This document shows, in pieces, positions 12,190-56,165 of a DNA stretch of 64,000 bases (positions within the stretch are counted from its first letter, which is position 1; every line of letters begins with the position of its first letter). The stretch is taken from contig NC_079171.1 in the NCBI RefSeq assembly GCF_947568905.1, positions 10,788,001 to 10,852,000 of the forward strand, written 5' to 3'. The position numbers and the translations under genes are program-made. The notes beneath the pieces are model-generated. The model made no database searches. It saw only the letters and a program-made list of their open reading frames with translations, and had not been told where the DNA came from. The stretch comes from Ostrea edulis. Taxonomy: Eukaryota.

Positions 12190-12852
12190 GCAATTCTTAA
12201 ATTCGGATTTTACTACGCATTCTTAAATCTAAAGCTTGAATTTTAAAATGCATTCTTAAATTTGGAACTTGAATTTTAAGATGCATTTTTAAATCTAGAA
12301 TTTAAATTTTAAGATGCATTCTTAAATCTAGAGTTTGGATTTTAACATGCATTTTTAAATATAAAGTTTGGATTTTTAAATGCATTCTTAAATCTAAAGT
12401 TTGGATTTTAAGATGCATTCTTAAATCTAGAGTTTAGATTTCAAGATGCATTCTTAAATCTAGACTTTGGATTTTAAGATATATTCTTAAATCTAGACGT
12501 TGGATTTTAAGATACATTCTTAAATCTAGAGATTGAATTTTAAGATGCATTATGAAGTATAGACTTTGGATTTTAAGATACATTCTTAAATCTAGAGGTT
12601 AGATTTTAAGATGCATTCTTAAACCTAGAGTTTGGATTTTAAGATGCATTCTGAAATGTTGAATTTGGATTTTTTATGTATTCTTAAATCTAGAGGTTGG
12701 ATTTTAAGATGCATTATTAAATCTAGAGGTTGGATTTTAAGATGCATTCTTAAATCTAGAGGTTGGATTTTAAGATGCATTCTTTAATCTAGAGGTTGGA
12801 TTTTAAGATGCATTCTTAAATCTAGTGGTTGGATTTTAAGATGCATTCTTCA
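12190..12852. repeat. 33-bp minisatellite, about 20 copies (lipocalin intron 2)
   Basis: Unit ATCTAGAGGTTGGATTTTAAGATGCATTCTTAA, period 33 (12721 to 12754); more diverged toward the 5' side. Confidence 0.92.
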
Positions 12853-33422: not shown

Positions 33423-36400
33423 TAAAAACAGACGACGATAGTGAGTAAAACAGACGATGATAGTGAATAAAACAGACGATGATAGTGAGTAAAACAGACG
33501 ATGATAGTGAGTAAAACAGACGACGATAGTGAGTAAAACAGACGATGATAGTGTATAAAACAGCCGATGATAGTGAGTAAAACAGACGATGATAGTGGAT
33601 AAAACAGACAACGATAGTGAATAAAACAGACGACGATAGTGAGTAAAACAGACAACGATAGTGGATAAAACAGACTATGATAGTGAGTAAAACAGACGAC
33701 GATAGGGAGTAAAACAGACGACGATAGTGAGTAAAACAGACGATGATAGTGGATAAAACAGACAACGATAGTGAATAAAACAGACAACGATAGTGAGTAA
33801 AACAGACAACGATAGTCGATAAAACAGACGATGATAGTGAGTAAATCAGACAACGATAGGGAGTAAAACAAACGATGATAGTGAGTAAAACAGACGATGA
33901 TAGTGTATAAAACAGACGATGATAGTGAGTAAAACAGACAATGATAGTGGATAAAACAGACAACGATAGTGAATAAAACAGACGACGATAGTGAGTAAAA
34001 CAGACAACGATAGTGGATAAAACAGACGATGATAGTGAGTAAAACAGACGATGATAGTGGATAAAACAGACGATGATAATGAGTAAAACAGACGATGATA
34101 GTGAATAAAACAGACGACGATAGTGAGTAAAACAGACGACGATAGTGTATAAAACAGACGACGATAGTGATCGAGTAAAACAGACAATGATAGTGAGTAA
34201 AATAGACAACGATAGTGGATAAAACAGACGACGATAGTGATCGAGTAAAACAGACGATGATAGTGAGTAAAACAGACAACGATAGTGAATAAAACAGACG
34301 ACGATAGTGGATAAAACAGACGACGATAGTGATCGAGTAAAACAGACAACGATAGTGAATAAAACAGACAACGATAGTGAATAAAACAGACGATGATAGT
34401 GAGTAAAACAGACAACGATAGTGAGTAAAACAGACAACGATAGTGAATAAAACAGACGATGATAGTGAGTAAAACAGACGATGATAGTGGGTAAAACAGA
34501 CGACGATAGTGAGTAAAACAGACGATGATAGTGTATAAAACAGACGATGATAGTGAGTAAAACAGACAACGATAGTGGATAAAACAGACGATGATAGTGA
34601 GTAAAACAGACGACGATAGTGAGTAAGACAGACGATGATAGTGAATAAAACAGACGATGATAGTGAGTAAAACAGACGACGATAGTGGATAAAACAGACA
34701 ACGATAGTGAATAAAACAGACGACGGTAGTGAGTAAAACAGACAACAATAATGGATAAAACAGACGATGATAGTGAGTAAAACAGACGACGATAGTGAAT
34801 AAAACAGACGACGATAGTGAGTAAAACAGACGAGGATAGTGGATAAAACAGACGACGATAGTGATCGAGTAAAAAGACAATGATAGTGAATAAAACAGAC
34901 AACGATAGTGGATAAAACAGACGACGATAGTGAGTAAAACAGACGACGATAGTGAGTAAAACAGACGATGATAGTGAGTAAAACAGAAAGCGATAGTGAA
35001 TAAAACAGACGACGATAGTGGATAAAACAGACGACGATAGTGAGTAAAACAGACAACGATAGTGAGTAAAACAGACGATGATAGTGAGTAAAACAGACAA
35101 CGATAGTGAATAAAACAGACGATGATAGTGGATAAAACAGACGACGATAGTGATTGAGTATAACAGACAACGATAGTGAATAAAACAGACAACGATAGTG
35201 AATAAAACAGACGATAATAGTGAGTAAAACATACAACGATAGTGAATAAAACAAACGATGAGAGTGAGTAAAACAGACGATGATAGTGAATAAAACAGAC
35301 AACGATAGTGAGTAAAACAGACGACGATAGGGAGTAAAACAGACGACGATAGTGAGTAAAACAGACGACGATGGTGAGTAAAACAGCCGATGATAGTGAA
35401 TAAAACAGACGACGAAAATGAGTAAAACAGACGACGATAGTGGATAAAACAGACAACGATAGTGAATAAAACTGACGACGGTAGTGAGTAAAACAAACAA
35501 CGATAGTGGATAAAACAGACGATAATAGTGAGTAAAACAGACGACGGTAGGGAGTAAAACAGACGACGATAGTGAGTAAAACAGACGATGATAGTGTATA
35601 AAACAGACGATGATAGTGAGTAAAACAGACAACGATTGTGGATAAAACAGATGATGATACTGATTAAAACAGACGACGATAGTGAGTAAAACAGACGATG
35701 ATAGTGAATAAAACTGACGATGATAGTGAGTAAAACAGACGACGATAGTGGATAAAACAGACAACGATAGTGAATAAAACAGACGATGATAGTGAGTAAA
35801 ACAGACGATGGTAGTGAGTAAAACAGACGACGATAGTGAGTAAAACAGACGACGATAGTGGATAAAACAGACGACGATAGTAATCGAGTAAAACAGACAA
35901 TGATAGTGAATAAAACAGACAACGATAGTGGATAAAACAGACGACGATAGTGATCGAGTAAAACAGACGACGGTAGTGAGTAAAACAGACAACGATAGTG
36001 GATAAAACAGACGATGATAGTGAGTAAAACAGACGATGATAGTGAATAAAACAGACGACGATAGTGAGTAAAACAGACGACGATAGTGGATAAAACAGAC
36101 GACGATAGTGATCGAGTAAAACAGACAATGATAGTGAATAAAACAGACAACGATAGTGGATAAAACAGACGACGATAGTGATCGAGTAAAACAGACGATG
36201 ATAGTAAGTAAAACAGACAACGATAGTGAATAAAACAGACGACGATAGTGGATAAAACAGACGACGATAGTGATCGAGTAAAACAGACAACGATAGTGAA
36301 TAAAACAGACAACGATAGTGAATAAAACAGACGATGATAGTGAGTAAAACAGACGACGATAGTGAATAAAACAGACGACGATAGTAATAAAAACAGACGA

Positions 36401-39296
36401 TGATAGTGAGTAAAACACACAACGATAGTTAGTAAAACATACAACGATAGTGAGTAAAACAGACGATGATAGTGATTAAAACAGATAACGATAGTGAGTA
36501 AAACAGACGACGATAGTGAGTAAAACAGACGACGATAGTGAGTAAAACAGACGACGATAGTGAATAAAACAGACAACGATAGTGAATAAAACAGACGACG
36601 GTAGTGAGTAAAACAGACAACAATAATGGATAAAACAGACGATGATAGTGAGTAAAACAGACGACGATAGTGAATAAAACAGACAACGATAGTGAGTAAA
36701 ACAGACGAGGATAGTGGATAAAACAGACGACGATAGTGATCGAGTAAAAAGACAATGATAGTGAATAAAACAGACAACGATAGTGGATAAAACAGACGAC
36801 GATAGTGAGTAAAACAGACGACGATAGTGAGTAAAACAGACGATGATAGTGAGTAAAACAGAAAGCGATAGTGAATAAAACAGACGACGATAGTGGATAA
36901 AACAGACGACGATAGTGAGTAAAACAGACAACGATAGTGAGTAAAACAGACGATGATAGTGAGTAAAACAGACAACGATAGTGAATAAAACAGACGACGA
37001 TAGTGGATAAAACAGACGACGATAGTGATTGAGTATAACAGACAACGATAGTGAATAAAACAGACAACGATAGTGAATAAAACAGACGATGATAGTGAGT
37101 AAAACATACAACGATAGTGAATAAAACAAACGATGAGAGTGAGTAAAACAGACGATGATAGTGAATAAAACAGACAACGATAGTGAGTAAAACAGACGAC
37201 GATAGGGAGTAAAACAGACGACGATAGTGAGTAAAACAGACGACGATGGTGAGTAAAACAGCCGATGATAGTGAATAAAACAGACGACGAAAATGAGTAA
37301 AACAGACGACGATAGTGGATAAAACAGACAACGATAGTGAATAAAACTGACGACGGTAGTGAGTAAAACAGACAACGATAGTGGATAAAACAGACGATGA
37401 TAGTGAGTAAAACAGACGACGGTAGGGAGTAAAACAGACGACGATAGTGAGTAAAACAGACGATGATAGTGTATAAAACAGACGATGATAGTGAGTAAAA
37501 CAGACAACGATTGTGGATAAAACAGACGATGATACTGATTAAAACAGACGACGATAGTGAGTAAAACAGACGATGATAGTGAATAAAACTGACGATGATA
37601 GTGAGTAAAACAGACGACGATAGTGGATAAAACAGACAACGATAGTGAATAAAACAGACGATGATAGTGAGTAAAACAGACGATGGTAGTGAGTAAAACA
37701 GACGACGATAGTGAGTAAAACAGACGACGATAGTGGATAAAACAGACGACGATAGTGATCGAGTAAAACAGACAATGATAGTGAATAAAACAGACAACGA
37801 TAGTGGATAAAACAGACGACGATAGTGATCGAGTAAAACAGACGACGGTAGTGAGTAAAACAGACAACGATAGTGGATAAAACAGACGATGATAGTGAGT
37901 AAAACAGACGATGATAGTGAATAAAACAGACGACGATAGTGAGTAAAACAGACGACGATAGTGGATAAAACAGACGACGATAGTGATCGAGTAAAACAGA
38001 CAATGATAGTGAATAAAACAGACAACGATAGTGGATAAAACAGACGACGATAGTGATCGAGTAAAACAGACGATGATAGTAAGTAAAACAGACAACGATA
38101 GTGAATAAAACAGACGACGATAGTGGATAAAACAGACGACGATAGTGATCGAGTAAAACAGACAACGATAGTGAATAAAACAGACGACGATAGTGAATAA
38201 AACAGACGACGATAGTAATAAAAACAGACGATGATAGTGAGTAAAACACACAACGATAGTTAGTAAAACATACAACGATAGTGAATAAAACAGACGATGA
38301 TAGTGATTAAAACAGATAACGATAGTGAGTAAAACAGACGACGATAGTTAGTAAAACAGACGACGATAGTGAGTAAAACAGACGACGATAGTGAATAAAA
38401 CAGACGACGATAGTGAATAAAACAGACAACGATAGTGAGTAAAACAGACGACGATAGTGAGTAAAACAGACGACGATAGTGGATAAAACAGACGACGATA
38501 GTGATCGAGTAAAACAGACAATGATAGTGAATAAAACAGACAACGATAGTGGATAAAACAGACGACGATAGTGATCGAGTAAAACAGACGACGGTAGTGA
38601 GTAAAACAGACAACGATAGTGGATAAAACAGACGATGATAGTGAGTAAAACAGACGATGATAGTGAATAAAACAGACGACGATAGTGAGTAAAACAGACG
38701 ACGATAGTGGATAAAACAGACGACGATAGTGATCGAGTAAAACAGACAATGATAGTGAATAAAACAGACAACGATAGTGGATAAAACAGACGACGATAGT
38801 GATCGAGTAAAACAGACGATGATAGTAAGTAAAACAGACAACGATAGTGAATAAAACAGACGACGATAGTGGATAAAACAGACGACGATAGTGATCGAGT
38901 AAAACAGACAACGATAGTGAATAAAACAGACGACGATAGTGAATAAAACAGACGACGATAGTAATAAAAACAGACGATGATAGTGAGTAAAACACACAAC
39001 GATAGTTAGTAAAACATACAACGATAGTGAATAAAACAGACGATGATAGTGATTAAAACAGATAACGATAGTGAGTAAAACAGACGACGATAGTTAGTAA
39101 AACAGACGACGATAGTGAGTAAAACAGACGACGATAGTGAATAAAACAGACGACGATAGTGAATAAAACAGACAACGATAGTGAGTAAAACAGACAACGA
39201 TAGTGAATAAAACAGACGACGATAGTGAGTAAAACAGACGACGATAGTTAATAAAACAGACGACGATAGTGAATAAAACAGACGACGATAGTGAGT
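33423..39296. repeat. 22-bp minisatellite/satellite array, about 265 monomers, with higher-order duplications
   Basis: Unit AAAACAGACGACGATAGTGAGT with -GAAT, -GGAT and 25-bp -GATCGAGT variants. Confidence 0.97.
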
Positions 39297-39804
39297 AGAA
39301 GAGCTGCATATCTCGTTGTTATTCTGCCGTGTGATTACGAATTCTGCAATCGATCACGTGACAGATATAGTGAATTTTTATGTGCAATTCCAATCATCAT
39401 CAGATATAAAAAATGATTACAAAAATTGAAAATAATTACAAAACACAATCTGATTATAATTAGACTTGCAGATTGCCTTCGTTTAGAGGAATGGAATGCA
39501 TCACACGTCTGATTTTGATTGAACTATTACATTAGCAGGGTGGAGTGATGGAAACTAGAATGTTGACTTAGAAGAGTATTGTTGATTACAGATATTTTAT
39601 AAGATTGTTACGCGTTGAAAACGATGATGATATAAACAAATATTCCCGAAGAAAAAGTCCGAGGGGTTAAATAAATCGAAAGTCAATTGAACGCATCTGA
39701 CTGCAACTCAGACGGTAAATTATGACGTCAAACGTAATAGTTCTACGTCACACGGATTACGTATCTATTGCTGATGTCTAAAAATACAGTTCATTTTTGA
39801 AATT

Positions 39805-53245: not shown

Positions 53246-53421
53246 CGCCGCGGTGGTCTAGAGGTTAGAGCGTTCGCCCCGCATGCGGAAGGCCGGGGTT
53301 TGAATCCCGGCCGCGACAGACCTAAGTATTTAAAGCAGGTAGTGACAGTTACATCGCTAAACGCTCGGCATCAGGTGTGAATGTCACGGGTCCTCGGAGA
53401 TGACCTTAAAAATGGATGTTA

Positions 53422-53456
<35 letters not shown>

Positions 53457-53577
53457 CACTGCTCAATGGCCGTTAGCCCAAGCATAGACCTAAATTTAAA
53501 GCCCTTCACAGGTTTTCTTGACGTCTCCATACGATTGAAAAATGATCGAGAGGGACGATACAATCAATCAATCAATC
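53246..53577 (+). mobile_element. tRNA-derived SINE family C, full length
   Basis: A box GTGGTCTAGAGGTT, B box GGTTTGAATCC, shared body, (CAAT)4 tail, CTTAAT on both flanks. Confidence 0.88.
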
Positions 53578-53799
53578 CTTAATGGAGAAAATTTGTTACT
53601 CATCTTAATAAAAGAAGACAACAAACAGAGGGGCGTGGTCAGACTCCCCGATGTCCTGTATCTGCGGACTCCACACCGGACATTATTTTACAGAAAGTTT
53701 CTCTTAACCTACATCTTTCTGAAAATAAACCGATACTTGGCCGTAAGCGCCTAAATGCTTCACACTCCGATAACTGGGTGTAACCATTCCTTATTATCT

Positions 53800-53935
53800 A
53801 TAGTCGATCAACAGGGGATGCTTACTCCTCCTAGCACCTGATCCTCCCTCTGGTGTATACAGGAGTCCATGTCTGCCTTCTCTATTCTTCATAGGAGTTA
53901 TGAGATTGATCACTGTTCGTTATCTTCACCTTTAT
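53800..53935 (+). mobile_element. Penelope-like 3' end that seeds the 43-bp array
   Basis: CAACAGGGGATGCTTACTCCTCCTAGCACCTGATCC...ATAGGAGTTATGAGATTGATCACTGTTCGTTATCTTCACCTTT. Confidence 0.85.
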
Positions 53936-55391
53936 AGGAGTTATGAGATTGATCACTGTTAGTTATCTTTACCTTTATAGGAGTTATGAGATTGATCACT
54001 GTTCGTTATCTTCACCTTTAAAGGAGTAATGAGATTGATCACTTCATTATCTTCACCTTAATAGGAGTAATGCGATTGATCACTGTTCGTTATCTTCACC
54101 TTTATAGGATTTATGAGATTGATCACTGTTCGTTATCTTCACCTTTATAGGAGTTATGAGATTGATCACTGTTCGTTATCTTTACCTTTATAGGAGTTAT
54201 GAGATTGATCACTGTTCGTTATCTTCACCTTTATAGGAGTTATGAGATTGATCACTATTCGTTATCTTCACCTTTATAGGAGTTATGAGATTGATCACTT
54301 CATTATCTTCACCTTAATAGGAGTAATGAGATTGATCACTGTTCGTTATCTTCACCTTTATAGGATTTATGAGATTGATCACTGTTCGTTATCTTCACCT
54401 TTATAGGAGTTATGAGATTGATCACTGTTCGTTATCTTTACCTTTATAGGAGTTATGAGATTGATCACTGTTCGTTATCTTCACCTTTATAGGAGTTATG
54501 AGATTGATCACTATTCGTTATCTTCACCTTTATAGGAGTTATGAGATTGATCACTTCATTATCTTCACCTTAATAGGAGTAATGAGATTGATCACTGTTC
54601 GTTATCTTCACCTTTATAGGAGTTATGAGATGGATCACTGTTCGTTATCTTCACCTTTATAGGAGTAATGAGATTGATCACTGTTCGTTATCTTCACCTT
54701 TATAGGAGTAATGAGATTGATCACTGTTCGTTATCTTCACCTTTATAGGAGTAATGAGATTGATCACTGTTCGTTATCTTCACCCTTTATAGGAGTTATG
54801 AGATTGATCACTGTTCGTTATCTTCACCTTTATAGGAGTTATGAGATTGATCACTGTTAGTTATCTTTACCTTTATAGGAGTTATGAGATTGATCACTGT
54901 TCGTTATCTTCACCTTTAAAGGAGTAATGAGATTGATCACTGTTCGTTATCTTCACCTTTATAGGAGTTATGAGATTGATCACTGTTCGTTATCTTCACC
55001 TTTAAAGGAGTAATGAGATTGATCACTGTTCGTTATCTTCACCTTAATAGGAGTTATGAGATTGATCACTGTTCGTTATCTTCACCTTTATAGGAGTTAT
55101 GAGATTGATCACTATTCGTTATCTTCACCTTTATAGGAGTAATGAGATTGATCACTGTTCGTTATCTTCACCTTTATTAGAGTTATGAGATTGATCACTG
55201 TTCGTTATCCTCACCTTTATAGGAGTTATGAGATTGATCACTGTTCGTTATCTTCACCTTTATAGGAGTTATGAGATTGATCACTGTTCGTTATCTTCAC
55301 CTTTATAGGAGTTATGAGATGGATCACTGTTCGTTATCTTCACCTTTATAGGAGTTATGAGATTGATCATTGTTCGTTGTCTTCATTTTTT
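53891..55391 (+). repeat. 43-bp tandem array (about 35 copies) of the Penelope-like terminal sequence
   Basis: Unit ATAGGAGTTATGAGATTGATCACTGTTCGTTATCTTCACCTTT; a 41-bp variant recurs at 54041, 54297 and 54553 (256-bp higher-order period). Confidence 0.95.
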
Positions 55392-55479
55392 CGTATGAAC
55401 ATTATCCCCTGTTAAGTAACGTTTTTATTAATAACCCTGACCTTGGCCAGATAGTATCAGAAAAATAGAGGAATGCCGG

Positions 55480-56165
55480 CTGGTGTGACCAGTCAACATG
55501 GGAGTATTTCAGTCTTTTAGACACCTGATCCCACCTCTGAGATGTTAAGGGCTCTGTGTTTGCTATATCCTTACCCTCTTATTCGTTGTATTATATATGA
55601 GATTGATCGCTTTTCATTATCTTCACTTTTTCATCAATGACCTTCATATTGGCCAACTGCCCTCAATCCAAGGCAAACAAAAAACAAAACAAAACAAAAA
55701 AACACCAAAAAGAAAACCACAAACAAAACTGATTCATCATGAACAACTACGAACTCTGCTATCATTCCATTACCGCGTTATAGCTCCTGGGTCGGGGACG
55801 TGTGGTATTGCTAGCAAATTCGTACTTGGAATCATTGTCTAATATAATTTCATTACAAAACTTGAAGAAATCTATAGTCGTTCTTCTGATCTTAGGTCGA
55901 ATACTAAATGTATCTGACGAGTTTCATACCAATTGTTAGGCCGTTCTATACATACTGATTTTGACTACGGATAACTCCGTTTACCTGGCCAACTTATATG
56001 ACTCACGGTGGGTGTGACAGGTCGATAGGGGATGCCTCCACTCCTCCTAGACACCTTATCCCACATCTGCTGTGTCCAGGAATCCGTATTTGACCCTCTA
56101 TTAATGTTGCATTCTTTATTGTGTTCATGAGATTGATCACTGTTATTTGTCTTCACTCTTCATCT
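55480..56165 (+). mobile_element. Two further degenerate Penelope-like 3' ends (55480-55635 and 55905-56165)
   Basis: GGCTGGTGTGACCAGTC...ACACCTGATCCCACCTCTG; TTTCATACCAATTGTTAG...GAGATTGATCACTG. Confidence 0.75.

What the first reader, a model, noticed from the sequence alone, without database searches (positions are those of the whole stretch)
53800..55391. A satellite born from reiteration of the last 43 nt of a Penelope-like retroelement
Seen: an ordinary family B end runs directly into about 35 head-to-tail copies of exactly its terminal 43 nt; each unit ends at TTATCTTCACCTTT, where stand-alone copies end (for example about 17715, 24250, 46265). The junction CCTTT|ATAGGAG mimics the parental context (GCTT|ATAGGAG at about 24400 on the minus strand), a short microhomology. 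A 41-bp variant every 256 bp shows a later six-monomer higher-order repeat. Established: PLE RTs are the closest relatives of telomerase RT. Inference: either telomerase-like repeated re-priming on the RNA 3' end during insertion, or DNA-level slippage/rolling circle. If such arrays recur only at PLE termini, this would be a little-described RT-driven route to satellite DNA.
Basis: partly seen in the sequence, partly recalled or inferred. Interest (0 to 1): 0.8.

Follow-up and report, generated by a model that had tools for sequence, protein, structure and literature searches.

The report
Minisatellite from a Penelope-element tail
A 1.5-kb run of 35 copies of a 43-base piece from near the end of an oyster jumping gene (a Naiad-type Penelope-like element) is one of roughly a thousand such runs in this genome; it behaves like a repeat carried by one sub-lineage of the element and enlarged by ordinary DNA slippage, and gives no clear evidence of telomerase-like copying.

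Summary
The array is real: window 53891-55390 holds 35 head-to-tail units of 43 bp, with a 256-bp six-unit higher-order repeat in 54020-54790. The parent is a Naiad-type Penelope-like element (N-terminal GIY-YIG, CxC, DKA, RT).

Two corrections. The unit is sub-terminal: solo copies end 3 nt further on, in CAT, and arrays are also followed by CAT. The adjacent copy is old and privately mutated, whereas the units match the family-wide unit, so the array was not copied from that copy's own end.

The locus is not unique. There are at least 8,720 unit-unit junctions, about 630 array starts and about 550 array ends, on all ten large contigs.

The decisive control is a sister 3'-end subfamily that differs only at unit positions 1 and 43. 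It has about nine times more pristine ends and a longer microhomology, yet only one array and a few doublets. Reiteration is therefore a lineage trait, not a general property of the RT.

Paralogous loci differ in unit number, which shows growth at the DNA level.

Verdict: a transposon-borne dispersed minisatellite, a new member of a known kind. RT-driven genesis is not excluded (about 0.15). Other first-reader notes in this scan report similar terminus-derived satellites elsewhere in this genome.

The parts
53805..53890 (+). Old, 5'-truncated 3'-UTR body of a Naiad-type Penelope-like element ('family B'), privately mutated, with a roughly 10-bp deletion
   Evidence: BLAST to 16 solo copies gives 70-81% identity from 53805 on. 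No other genomic copy lies within 3 mismatches in 48 nt. 20 of 45 alignment columns differ from the family majority.
53891..55347 (+). Units 1-34 of the 43-bp array. Unit 1 is identical to the family-wide unit, and interior units differ from it by 2.2%.
54020..54790 (+). Higher-order repeat block: three 256-bp periods (five 43-bp units plus one 41-bp variant unit at 54020, 54276 and 54532)
   Evidence: Identity at lag 256 is 97.3%, against 85% at lag 43. The unit code string shows GBADHC twice.
55348..55390 (+). Last unit, with 4 private changes, all at unit positions 23 or later. It is probably the original terminal unit of the old copy.
   Evidence: Reads from the family at large carry the consensus base at 55370, 55379 and 55386-87.
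55391..55394 (+). TCGT, a degenerate form of the element's terminal (T)CAT that follows the unit in solo copies
   Evidence: Solo ends read ...CACCTTT(T)CAT. The sequence here is shown.
55480..55633 (+). Second, separate old 5'-truncated copy of the same element end (TCAT type), about 90 bp downstream of the array. It is a neighbour, not part of the array.

Best explanation
The array is one locus of a dispersed minisatellite. I estimate on the order of 1,000 loci (1,000-2,000), with at least 8,700 unit-unit junctions, about 0.04% of the genome. It is built from a 43-nt sub-terminal segment (nt -46 to -4) of the 3' UTR of a Naiad-type Penelope-like element of an oyster.

Shown: the parent's identity, the fixed phase, the CAT that follows arrays, the many independent loci, the restriction to one 3'-end subfamily, the locus-specific higher-order repeats, and the changes in unit number between paralogous loci.

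Inferred: the first duplication (1 to 2 units, across a TT junction) is a rare event. Once present in transcribed copies of one subfamily, it was inherited by their 5'-truncated retrotransposed progeny. Tails with two or a few units then expand and contract locally by unequal exchange or replication slippage, up to 35-40 units.

In this window the young units lie in register between an older copy's body and its old terminal unit. They were therefore acquired by a homology-guided event, not by reiteration of the neighbour's own end. That event could be homology-primed reverse transcription of array-bearing RNA at an old tail, or ectopic recombination or conversion.
For: Parent: a GIY-YIG domain scores 26.4 bits against a cut-off of 22.6, and lies upstream of a KR-rich block, CxC, DKA and RT. 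The ORF stops about 250 nt before the 3' end. No hammerhead ribozyme is found. The family gives 26,661 first-look candidates.

Recurrence: 8,720 junction hits; 630 body-unit-unit starts, 59 of them exact; 552 unit-unit-CAT ends, 83 exact. These lie on all ten large contigs. Six independent loci have different 5' truncation points of about 42, 46, 86, 116, 122 and 430 nt.

Lineage restriction: exact solo ends number about 100 per 103 Mb for the array-type subfamily, against 100 per 11.7 Mb for the sister subfamily. Sister-type junctions number 11 hits, which is one 42-bp array plus doublets. There are 0 TTG|G junctions and only 42 TTT|G junctions, mostly inside ordinary arrays. Array edges are about 98% of the array-type subfamily.

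Sizes: paired exact starts and ends give 2,2,2,2,2,2,3,5,5,7,11,13 units, all exact multiples of 43.

DNA-level growth: paralogous loci with 93-94% identical flanks carry 3 vs 11, 10 vs 6 and 16 vs 5 units, with conserved edge units and different interiors. Higher-order repeats are locus-specific.

Young array in an old copy.
Against: All six independent arrays I could inspect have a body upstream. If templates carried long arrays, many insertions should be truncated inside the array. The heritable state must therefore be short (2-3 units), or this is a sampling effect.

No array-bearing copy with an ORF, and no transcript, was demonstrated. RNA-library contigs with junctions may be DNA.

In 3-4 of 5 loci the body or edge units are more diverged than the interior. 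Simple co-insertion does not predict this.

Loci were ascertained through exact junctions or subfamily-specific patterns, which biases towards young arrays.
Confidence: 0.55

Rival explanations
1. RT-driven genesis at each insertion. The Penelope-like RT copies the terminal roughly 43 nt, realigns on the RNA and copies it again, telomerase-like. Each array is then born with its insertion.
For: All arrays share phase and length. They sit at the end where cDNA synthesis starts and are followed by the canonical CAT. Penelope-like elements are known to start reverse transcription internally at two sites 30-40 nt apart, and to form partial tandems (PMC11167929, PMC8557442). A LINE RT does reiterate terminal 5-nt repeats (PMC1636434). 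At C1:3.073 Mb the body, array and end are all young, in an A/T-rich target.
Against: The unit excludes the terminal CAT. The sister subfamily has a better (4-nt) microhomology and about 9 times more pristine ends, yet has at least 100 times fewer arrays. The size distribution is over-dispersed for one re-priming rate. In this window and at C1:1.106 Mb the array is younger than the copy it is fused to. Unit number changes without RT between paralogues.
Confidence: 0.15
2. Independent DNA-level birth at each locus. Replication slippage or unequal exchange duplicates the segment after insertion, and the arrays are unrelated to each other.
For: DNA-level change of unit number is directly seen between paralogues. 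Higher-order repeats are locus-specific. Edge units are more diverged than interiors, as in classical satellites.
Against: A 2-nt microhomology cannot explain about 9% of pristine ends of one subfamily carrying a repeat while the sister carries about 0.05-0.1%, at matched (pristine) age. It also cannot explain one fixed phase at on the order of 1,000 loci. No tandem array of period 10 or more was found in 66 kb of internal element DNA. Interior units here match the family unit, not the private state of the adjacent copy.
Confidence: 0.1
3. Spread of pre-formed arrays as DNA. Extrachromosomal circles or ectopic recombination or conversion move array units into pre-existing solo ends by homology.
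For: In this window, young consensus-like units lie in register between an old body and an old terminal unit whose changes are all in its 3' half. No CAT lies between them, as expected for a crossover inside a unit. C1:1.106 Mb has a sister-type, diverged unit 1 followed by consensus units.
Against: Random invasion of solo ends should give mostly sister-subfamily edges among pristine arrays, since those solos are about 9 times commoner. Observed edges are about 98% array-type. No circular or junction evidence is available.
Confidence: 0.15

Closest known systems
Transposon-borne dispersed satellite-like repeats of bivalves (Helentron/MITE-carried arrays in Crassostrea gigas and Donax; oyster satellitomes dominated by TE-related satDNAs: PMC7492417, PMC3879986, PMC8268682, PMC11136912)
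   Same: Many short arrays are scattered over all chromosomes, physically joined to a mobile-element part. Copy number varies between loci, and spread is attributed to the element with local expansion afterwards.
   Different: The carrier here is a retroelement (a Naiad-type Penelope-like element), not a rolling-circle DNA transposon. The unit is a piece of the element's own 3' tail. Arrays sit 3 nt from the element's end. I found no published record of this unit. The supplementary lists of the Ostrea satellitome paper were not available.
Penelope-like element 'tail' and pseudo-LTR partial tandems (PMC8557442; PMC11167929)
   Same: This is a reiteration of 3'-end material of a Penelope-like element. 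The segment is of about tail size (43 nt against 30-40) at the end where reverse transcription starts. Such elements are reported to nick and insert into their own copies, which would fit young units sitting in an old copy.
   Different: The described tail is a single optional extension between two RT start sites, and pseudo-LTRs are hundreds of bp. Neither is a 2-40-unit array. I have no evidence for tail-less ends in this family, so the equation of unit with tail is untested.
Template slippage on 3'-terminal repeats of stringent LINEs (eel UnaL2 (UGUAA)n; PMC1636434)
   Same: It is an RT-driven, telomerase-like reiteration of the template's 3' end at initiation, and it needs a pre-existing repeat.
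   Different: There the unit is 5 nt and strictly terminal. Here the unit is 43 nt, is followed by a conserved CAT, is restricted to one subfamily, and demonstrably changes at the DNA level.
Non-LTR retrozymes as tandem derivatives of Penelope-like pseudo-LTRs (bioRxiv 10.64898/2026.07.22.740005; PMC4209133)
   Same: These are tandem repeats derived from non-coding terminal regions of Penelope-like elements, and are dispersed and non-autonomous.
   Different: Retrozyme units are longer and carry hammerhead ribozymes. No hammerhead is found here, as expected for Naiads, and the unit shows no stable fold.
Satellites born from hypervariable 3' UTRs of LTR retrotransposons in plants (Macas 2009; Vondrak 2020; seen only as references in PMC11136912)
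   Same: A tandem repeat arises inside a retroelement's 3' UTR, is carried by the element, and can then expand into satellite arrays.
   Different: The element class and host differ. Those arrays can reach megabases, whereas these stay at about 2 kb or less. This comparison rests on reference-list titles and my own knowledge, and was not tested here.

Membership tests
Naiad-type Penelope-like element (parent of the unit) | GIY-YIG endonuclease with cysteines inside the core, placed N-terminal to the RT | tested here: met
   L071:3272-3460:- hits Pfam GIY-YIG at 26.4 bits against a cut-off of 22.6. The C-x2-C lies between the GIY-like and YVG motifs. It is upstream of the REDHWIRTLG...N block and the RT, and is separated from them by a frameshift in the copies seen.
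Naiad-type Penelope-like element (parent of the unit) | CxC motif between EN and RT, and DKG motif changed to DKA | tested here: met
   PPTCSCSSS and PADKASNN are in the ORFs of L067 and L073. The diagnostic features are as given in PMC8557442.
Naiad-type Penelope-like element (parent of the unit) | Reverse transcriptase domain | tested here: inconclusive
   Pfam RVT_1 scores 22.8 bits, below its cut-off of 29.6. RT-like motifs (YDFSTLY, IPMGT, RYIDD) are visible. No phylogeny was made.
Naiad-type Penelope-like element (parent of the unit) | No C-terminal endonuclease, no canonical hammerhead ribozyme, and frequent 5' truncation | tested here: met
   The ORF ends (...HTDC stop) about 250 nt before the 3' end. 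Rfam finds only a tRNA in a 64-kb window that holds about 15 ends. Copies are truncated at 30 to more than 1,500 nt from the end.
Naiad-type Penelope-like element (parent of the unit) | A/T-rich or (TA)n target; partial tandems (pseudo-LTRs); insertion-in-fingers domain | tested here: inconclusive
   The read consensus beyond CAT is A/T-rich at low agreement. Three RT matches lie at a 4,330-bp period at C8:36.00 Mb, but the junctions were not inspected. The insertion-in-fingers domain was not examined.
Transposon-derived dispersed satellite / minisatellite | Head-to-tail units at many loci, derived from and joined to a mobile-element sequence, with local homogenisation | tested here: met
Penelope-like 'tail' (optional 30-40-bp extension between two RT start sites) | The same element ends at two alternative positions one tail-length apart | not tested
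   All roughly 45 solo ends seen carry the unit plus CAT. Ends lacking the unit could not be searched for without an anchor. The unit is 43 nt, not 30-40.
RT template-slippage terminal repeats (UnaL2 type) | The repeats are the very 3' end of the template, and repeat number rises as a general property of the RT on that end | tested here: not met
   Arrays are followed by a conserved CAT. The sister subfamily, with a near-identical end, almost never reiterates.

The most novel reading that the evidence does not exclude
The 43-nt unit is the functional 'tail' of this Naiad element. Its RNP homes to tail sequences in existing copies and adds units by repeated short, homology-primed reverse transcription. 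Arrays are then built and refreshed by the RT, with more units making more targets. This would be an RT-driven, self-reinforcing route to satellite DNA, specific to the RT/RNA pair of one subfamily.
Probability: 0.15. Interest if true: 0.75.

Novelty: new member of a known kind. Interest (0 to 1): 0.4.

Why it matters
Bivalve genomes are known for satellites carried by DNA transposons. This adds a retroelement case, in which a Penelope-like element's own 3' tail seeds on the order of 1,000 short arrays.

The system includes a built-in natural control: two end-subfamilies that differ at two bases, one forming arrays and one not. That makes 'birth versus inheritance versus growth' of a young satellite testable with population long reads.

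It also gives Penelope-like element biochemistry a concrete substrate pair for asking how the RT start site and the tail work. If the RT-driven reading were true, it would link telomerase-like RTs to satellite genesis. My evidence leans against that as the main cause.

Tried and rejected
(1) Hammerhead or other RNA family in the element end: Rfam finds only a tRNA at 53247-53318.

(2) Hairpin-driven slippage: the last 140 nt as RNA gives z = +0.35, and three units as DNA give z = +1.19, so there is no stable structure.

(3) 'Family A' (53316-53577) as the upstream part of the same element: rejected. It is a separate tRNA-derived SINE with a (CAAT)n tail, and its order relative to family B differs elsewhere.

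(4) Shorter bodies in array-bearing copies as evidence that the array was part of the cDNA: dropped. Solo copies as short as 30-35 nt exist, and my solo sample was length-biased.

(5) A preferred 5' end at about -138: rejected. The truncation points differ.

(6) Nested insertion of a young array into the old copy: rejected, because there is no CAT between unit 34 and the last unit.

(7) Subfamily explanation for the odd body: rejected. The body variant is unique in the genome.

(8) The totals at 2 mismatches or fewer for the two subfamilies (15,853 and 14,488) overlap, because the subfamilies differ by only 2 nt. Only densities of exact matches were used.

The right junction laid at about 1.5x coverage was too thin to show presence, absence or length polymorphism at this locus.

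(10) Literature: there is no hit for the unit sequence. The Ostrea satellitome supplements are not held.

No full-length element was examined, and no consensus of the element was built. A majority-rule reference for 133 nt of non-coding 3' UTR was used in memory only, to count differences.

Full report
OBSERVATION. The window holds a clean tandem array. TRF reports a 43-bp period, 35.0 copies and 94% matches at 53887-55385. My segmentation places it at 53891-55390, made of 31 units of 43 bp, 3 of 41 bp and 1 of 44 bp. A 29-nt core of the unit matches 36 times in the window, against 0 in 100 shuffles. The array is joined in register to a 5'-truncated copy of a dispersed repeat at 53805-53890. 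The 41-bp variant lies at 54020, 54276 and 54532. Within 54020-54790, self-identity at lag 256 is 97.3%, against 85% at lag 43. The 3' half of the array has no higher-order structure.

WHAT THE PARENT IS. About 15 copies of 'family B' lie in the window, and their 5' ends vary. In the genome (G000, 895 Mb; the window is C8:10788001-10852000) homology runs upstream into coding sequence. Copies are truncated at many points, and a protein search gives 26,661 first-look candidates.

Natural ORF pieces show a CxC motif, PADKA (the Naiad form of DKG), RT motifs and a KR-rich block. Upstream, in another frame, lies a GIY-YIG core with C-x2-C. It scores 26.4 bits against Pfam's cut-off of 22.6. RVT_1 itself is sub-threshold at 22.8 bits against 29.6. 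The ORF stops about 250 nt before the 3' end with no C-terminal endonuclease, and there is no hammerhead ribozyme.

TWO CORRECTIONS. First, solo copies do not end at ...CACCTTT. They continue with a conserved CAT (TCAT in older copies). A 58-nt 'body + unit + CAT' pattern has thousands of hits. The repeated piece is therefore nt -46 to -4 of the element.

Second, the copy next to the array is not ordinary. Its body has private substitutions and a roughly 10-bp deletion, and no other genomic copy lies within 3 mismatches in 48 nt. Unit 1 is identical to the family-wide unit, and interior units differ from it at only 28 of 1247 positions.

The last unit (55348-55390) has 4 private changes, all at positions 23 or later, followed by TCGT, a decayed old-type TCAT. 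Reads from the family at large carry the consensus bases at exactly those places. There is no CAT between unit 34 and the last unit. Young units therefore sit in register between an old body and an old terminal unit. The array was not made by reiterating the neighbour's own end.

RECURRENCE. The unit-unit junction (34 nt, up to 2 mismatches) occurs 8,720 times. The pattern 'body-unit-unit' occurs 630 times, 59 of them exact. The pattern 'unit-unit-CAT' occurs 552 times, 83 exact. These are found on all ten large contigs, with zero hits for the reversed controls.

There are 23 loci with an exact junction in the first 9.2 Mb of C1. Array ends in that stretch are roughly twice as dense as the genome average. 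Allowing for that, I estimate on the order of 1,000 arrays genome-wide (1,000-2,000).

Pairing exact starts and ends gives 2,2,2,2,2,2,3,5,5,7,11,13 units, all exact multiples of 43. Nine fetched loci amount to six independent events, with 5' truncation points of about 42, 46, 86, 116, 122 and 430 nt. This window's downstream flank is single-copy. The locus is therefore not unique, and the phase is fixed.

THE DECISIVE CONTROL. Solo ends fall into two subfamilies that differ only at unit positions 1 and 43: GCTT|ATAGGAG...CACCTTT|CAT and GCTT|GTAGGAG...CACCTTG|CAT. Exact 58-mers of the first type number about 100 over 103 Mb of C1. Those of the second number 100 within 11.7 Mb, roughly nine times more. 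The totals at 2 mismatches or fewer overlap and were not used.

All arrays are of the first type. The second type would have a 4-nt microhomology (CTTG) and a 42-bp unit. That junction gives only 11 hits, which is one array at C7:87599041 plus doublets. The TTG|G junction gives none. The TTT|G junction gives 42 hits, mostly variants inside ordinary arrays.

About 9% of pristine ends of the first type are preceded by another unit (83 against about 850). The figure for the second type is about 0.05-0.1%. Both sets are matched for age because both are pristine. Reiteration is therefore neither a general consequence of this RT acting on this end, nor of microhomology, nor of elapsed time. It is a trait of a lineage.

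Array edges are also about 98% of the first type. This argues against random recombination of arrays into solo ends.

GROWTH. Three pairs of paralogous loci, with flanks 93-94% identical, carry 3 vs 11, 10 vs 6 and 16 vs 5 units. Their edge units are conserved and their interiors differ. Higher-order repeats are locus-specific. Unit number therefore changes at the DNA level.

The size distribution also fits this. Half of the arrays have 2 units, with a long tail beyond. It suggests rare birth and easy growth once two units exist, not one constant re-priming rate.

As a small control, TRF finds no array of period 10 or more in 66 kb of internal element DNA from 38 loci. The unit has no stable fold.

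MECHANISM. My best reading (0.55) has four steps:
- A rare first duplication.
- Inheritance of tails of two or a few units by retrotransposed, 5'-truncated progeny of one subfamily.
- Local DNA-level expansion.
- In this window, a homology-guided acquisition by an old copy.

The last step could be homology-primed reverse transcription at an old tail. Penelope-like elements are reported to recognise their tail and to insert into their own copies (PMC11167929). It could equally be ectopic recombination. I cannot separate the two.

The rivals are per-insertion RT stutter (0.15), independent DNA slippage at each locus (0.10) and DNA-borne spread of arrays (0.15).

Several points count against my reading. 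All six inspected arrays have bodies. No array-bearing transcript or ORF-bearing master copy was shown. Interiors younger than bodies in several loci remain unexplained (notebook).

COMPARISON AND NOVELTY. The closest known relatives are:
- transposon-borne dispersed satellites of bivalves (PMC7492417, PMC11136912);
- the Penelope-like tail and pseudo-LTR tandems (PMC8557442, PMC11167929);
- LINE terminal-repeat template slippage (PMC1636434);
- retrozymes derived from Penelope-like pseudo-LTRs (bioRxiv 2026).

I found no published record of this unit. I rate it a new member of a known kind, of moderate interest.

Other first-reader notes in this scan (s1-307086, s1-279259) report similar terminus-derived satellites elsewhere in this genome. 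I did not check them.

LIMITS. 

Noticed in passing
window 53247-53577: A tRNA-derived SINE: Rfam tRNA at 53247-53318 (36.3 bits), a body of about 250 bp and a (CAAT)n tail. About 15 relatives lie in the window. It is unrelated to the array.
   Followed up: partly
window 53585-53738: A low-copy repeat with 18 copies at about 90% identity on C8 and C10, spaced 100-250 kb apart. It looks like part of large segmental repeats. Homology stops 67 bp before the element copy.
   Followed up: partly
G000 C1:25.69-26.01 Mb and C3:40.52-40.88 Mb: Array starts recur every 48-58 kb or so with identical sequence. This suggests large tandem segmental duplications (or uncollapsed assembly copies), each carrying an array.
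   Followed up: no
G000 C8:36004612-36013724 (L074-L076): Three RT matches of the element on one strand at an exact 4,330-bp period, with identical 471-aa open frames. This is a head-to-tail partial tandem, as described for Penelope-like elements.
   Followed up: no
G000 C7:87599041-87599199: An independent array of the sister end-subfamily with a 42-bp unit (four exact junctions at 42-bp spacing). It is the only one of its kind found.
   Followed up: partly
window 24115-24257 (+) and 24500-24362 (-): Two 3' ends of the element face each other about 105 bp apart (a convergent pair). This may be one of the inverted arrangements typical of Penelope-like insertions.
   Followed up: no
window about 22531 (-) and 51759 (+): Extremely short 5'-truncated element ends (30-35 nt, cut inside the unit). 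Homopolymer runs lie just upstream (C and A runs at one, G-rich at the other).
   Followed up: no
window 33425-39297, 13179-14234, 12205-12850, 40138-40762 and others: The window is crowded with other minisatellites, for example 22 bp x 263, 49 bp x 22, 33 bp x 20 and 37 bp x 17. Whether they also derive from mobile-element ends was not examined.
   Followed up: no
runs X18/X19 (organism B) and X20 (RNA library), laid on window 55215-55600: Contigs of a differently labelled organism and of an RNA-seq library contain unit-unit junctions and unit-CAT ends. The satellite may therefore be shared with another taxon or label, and may be transcribed. Contaminating DNA is not excluded.
   Followed up: partly
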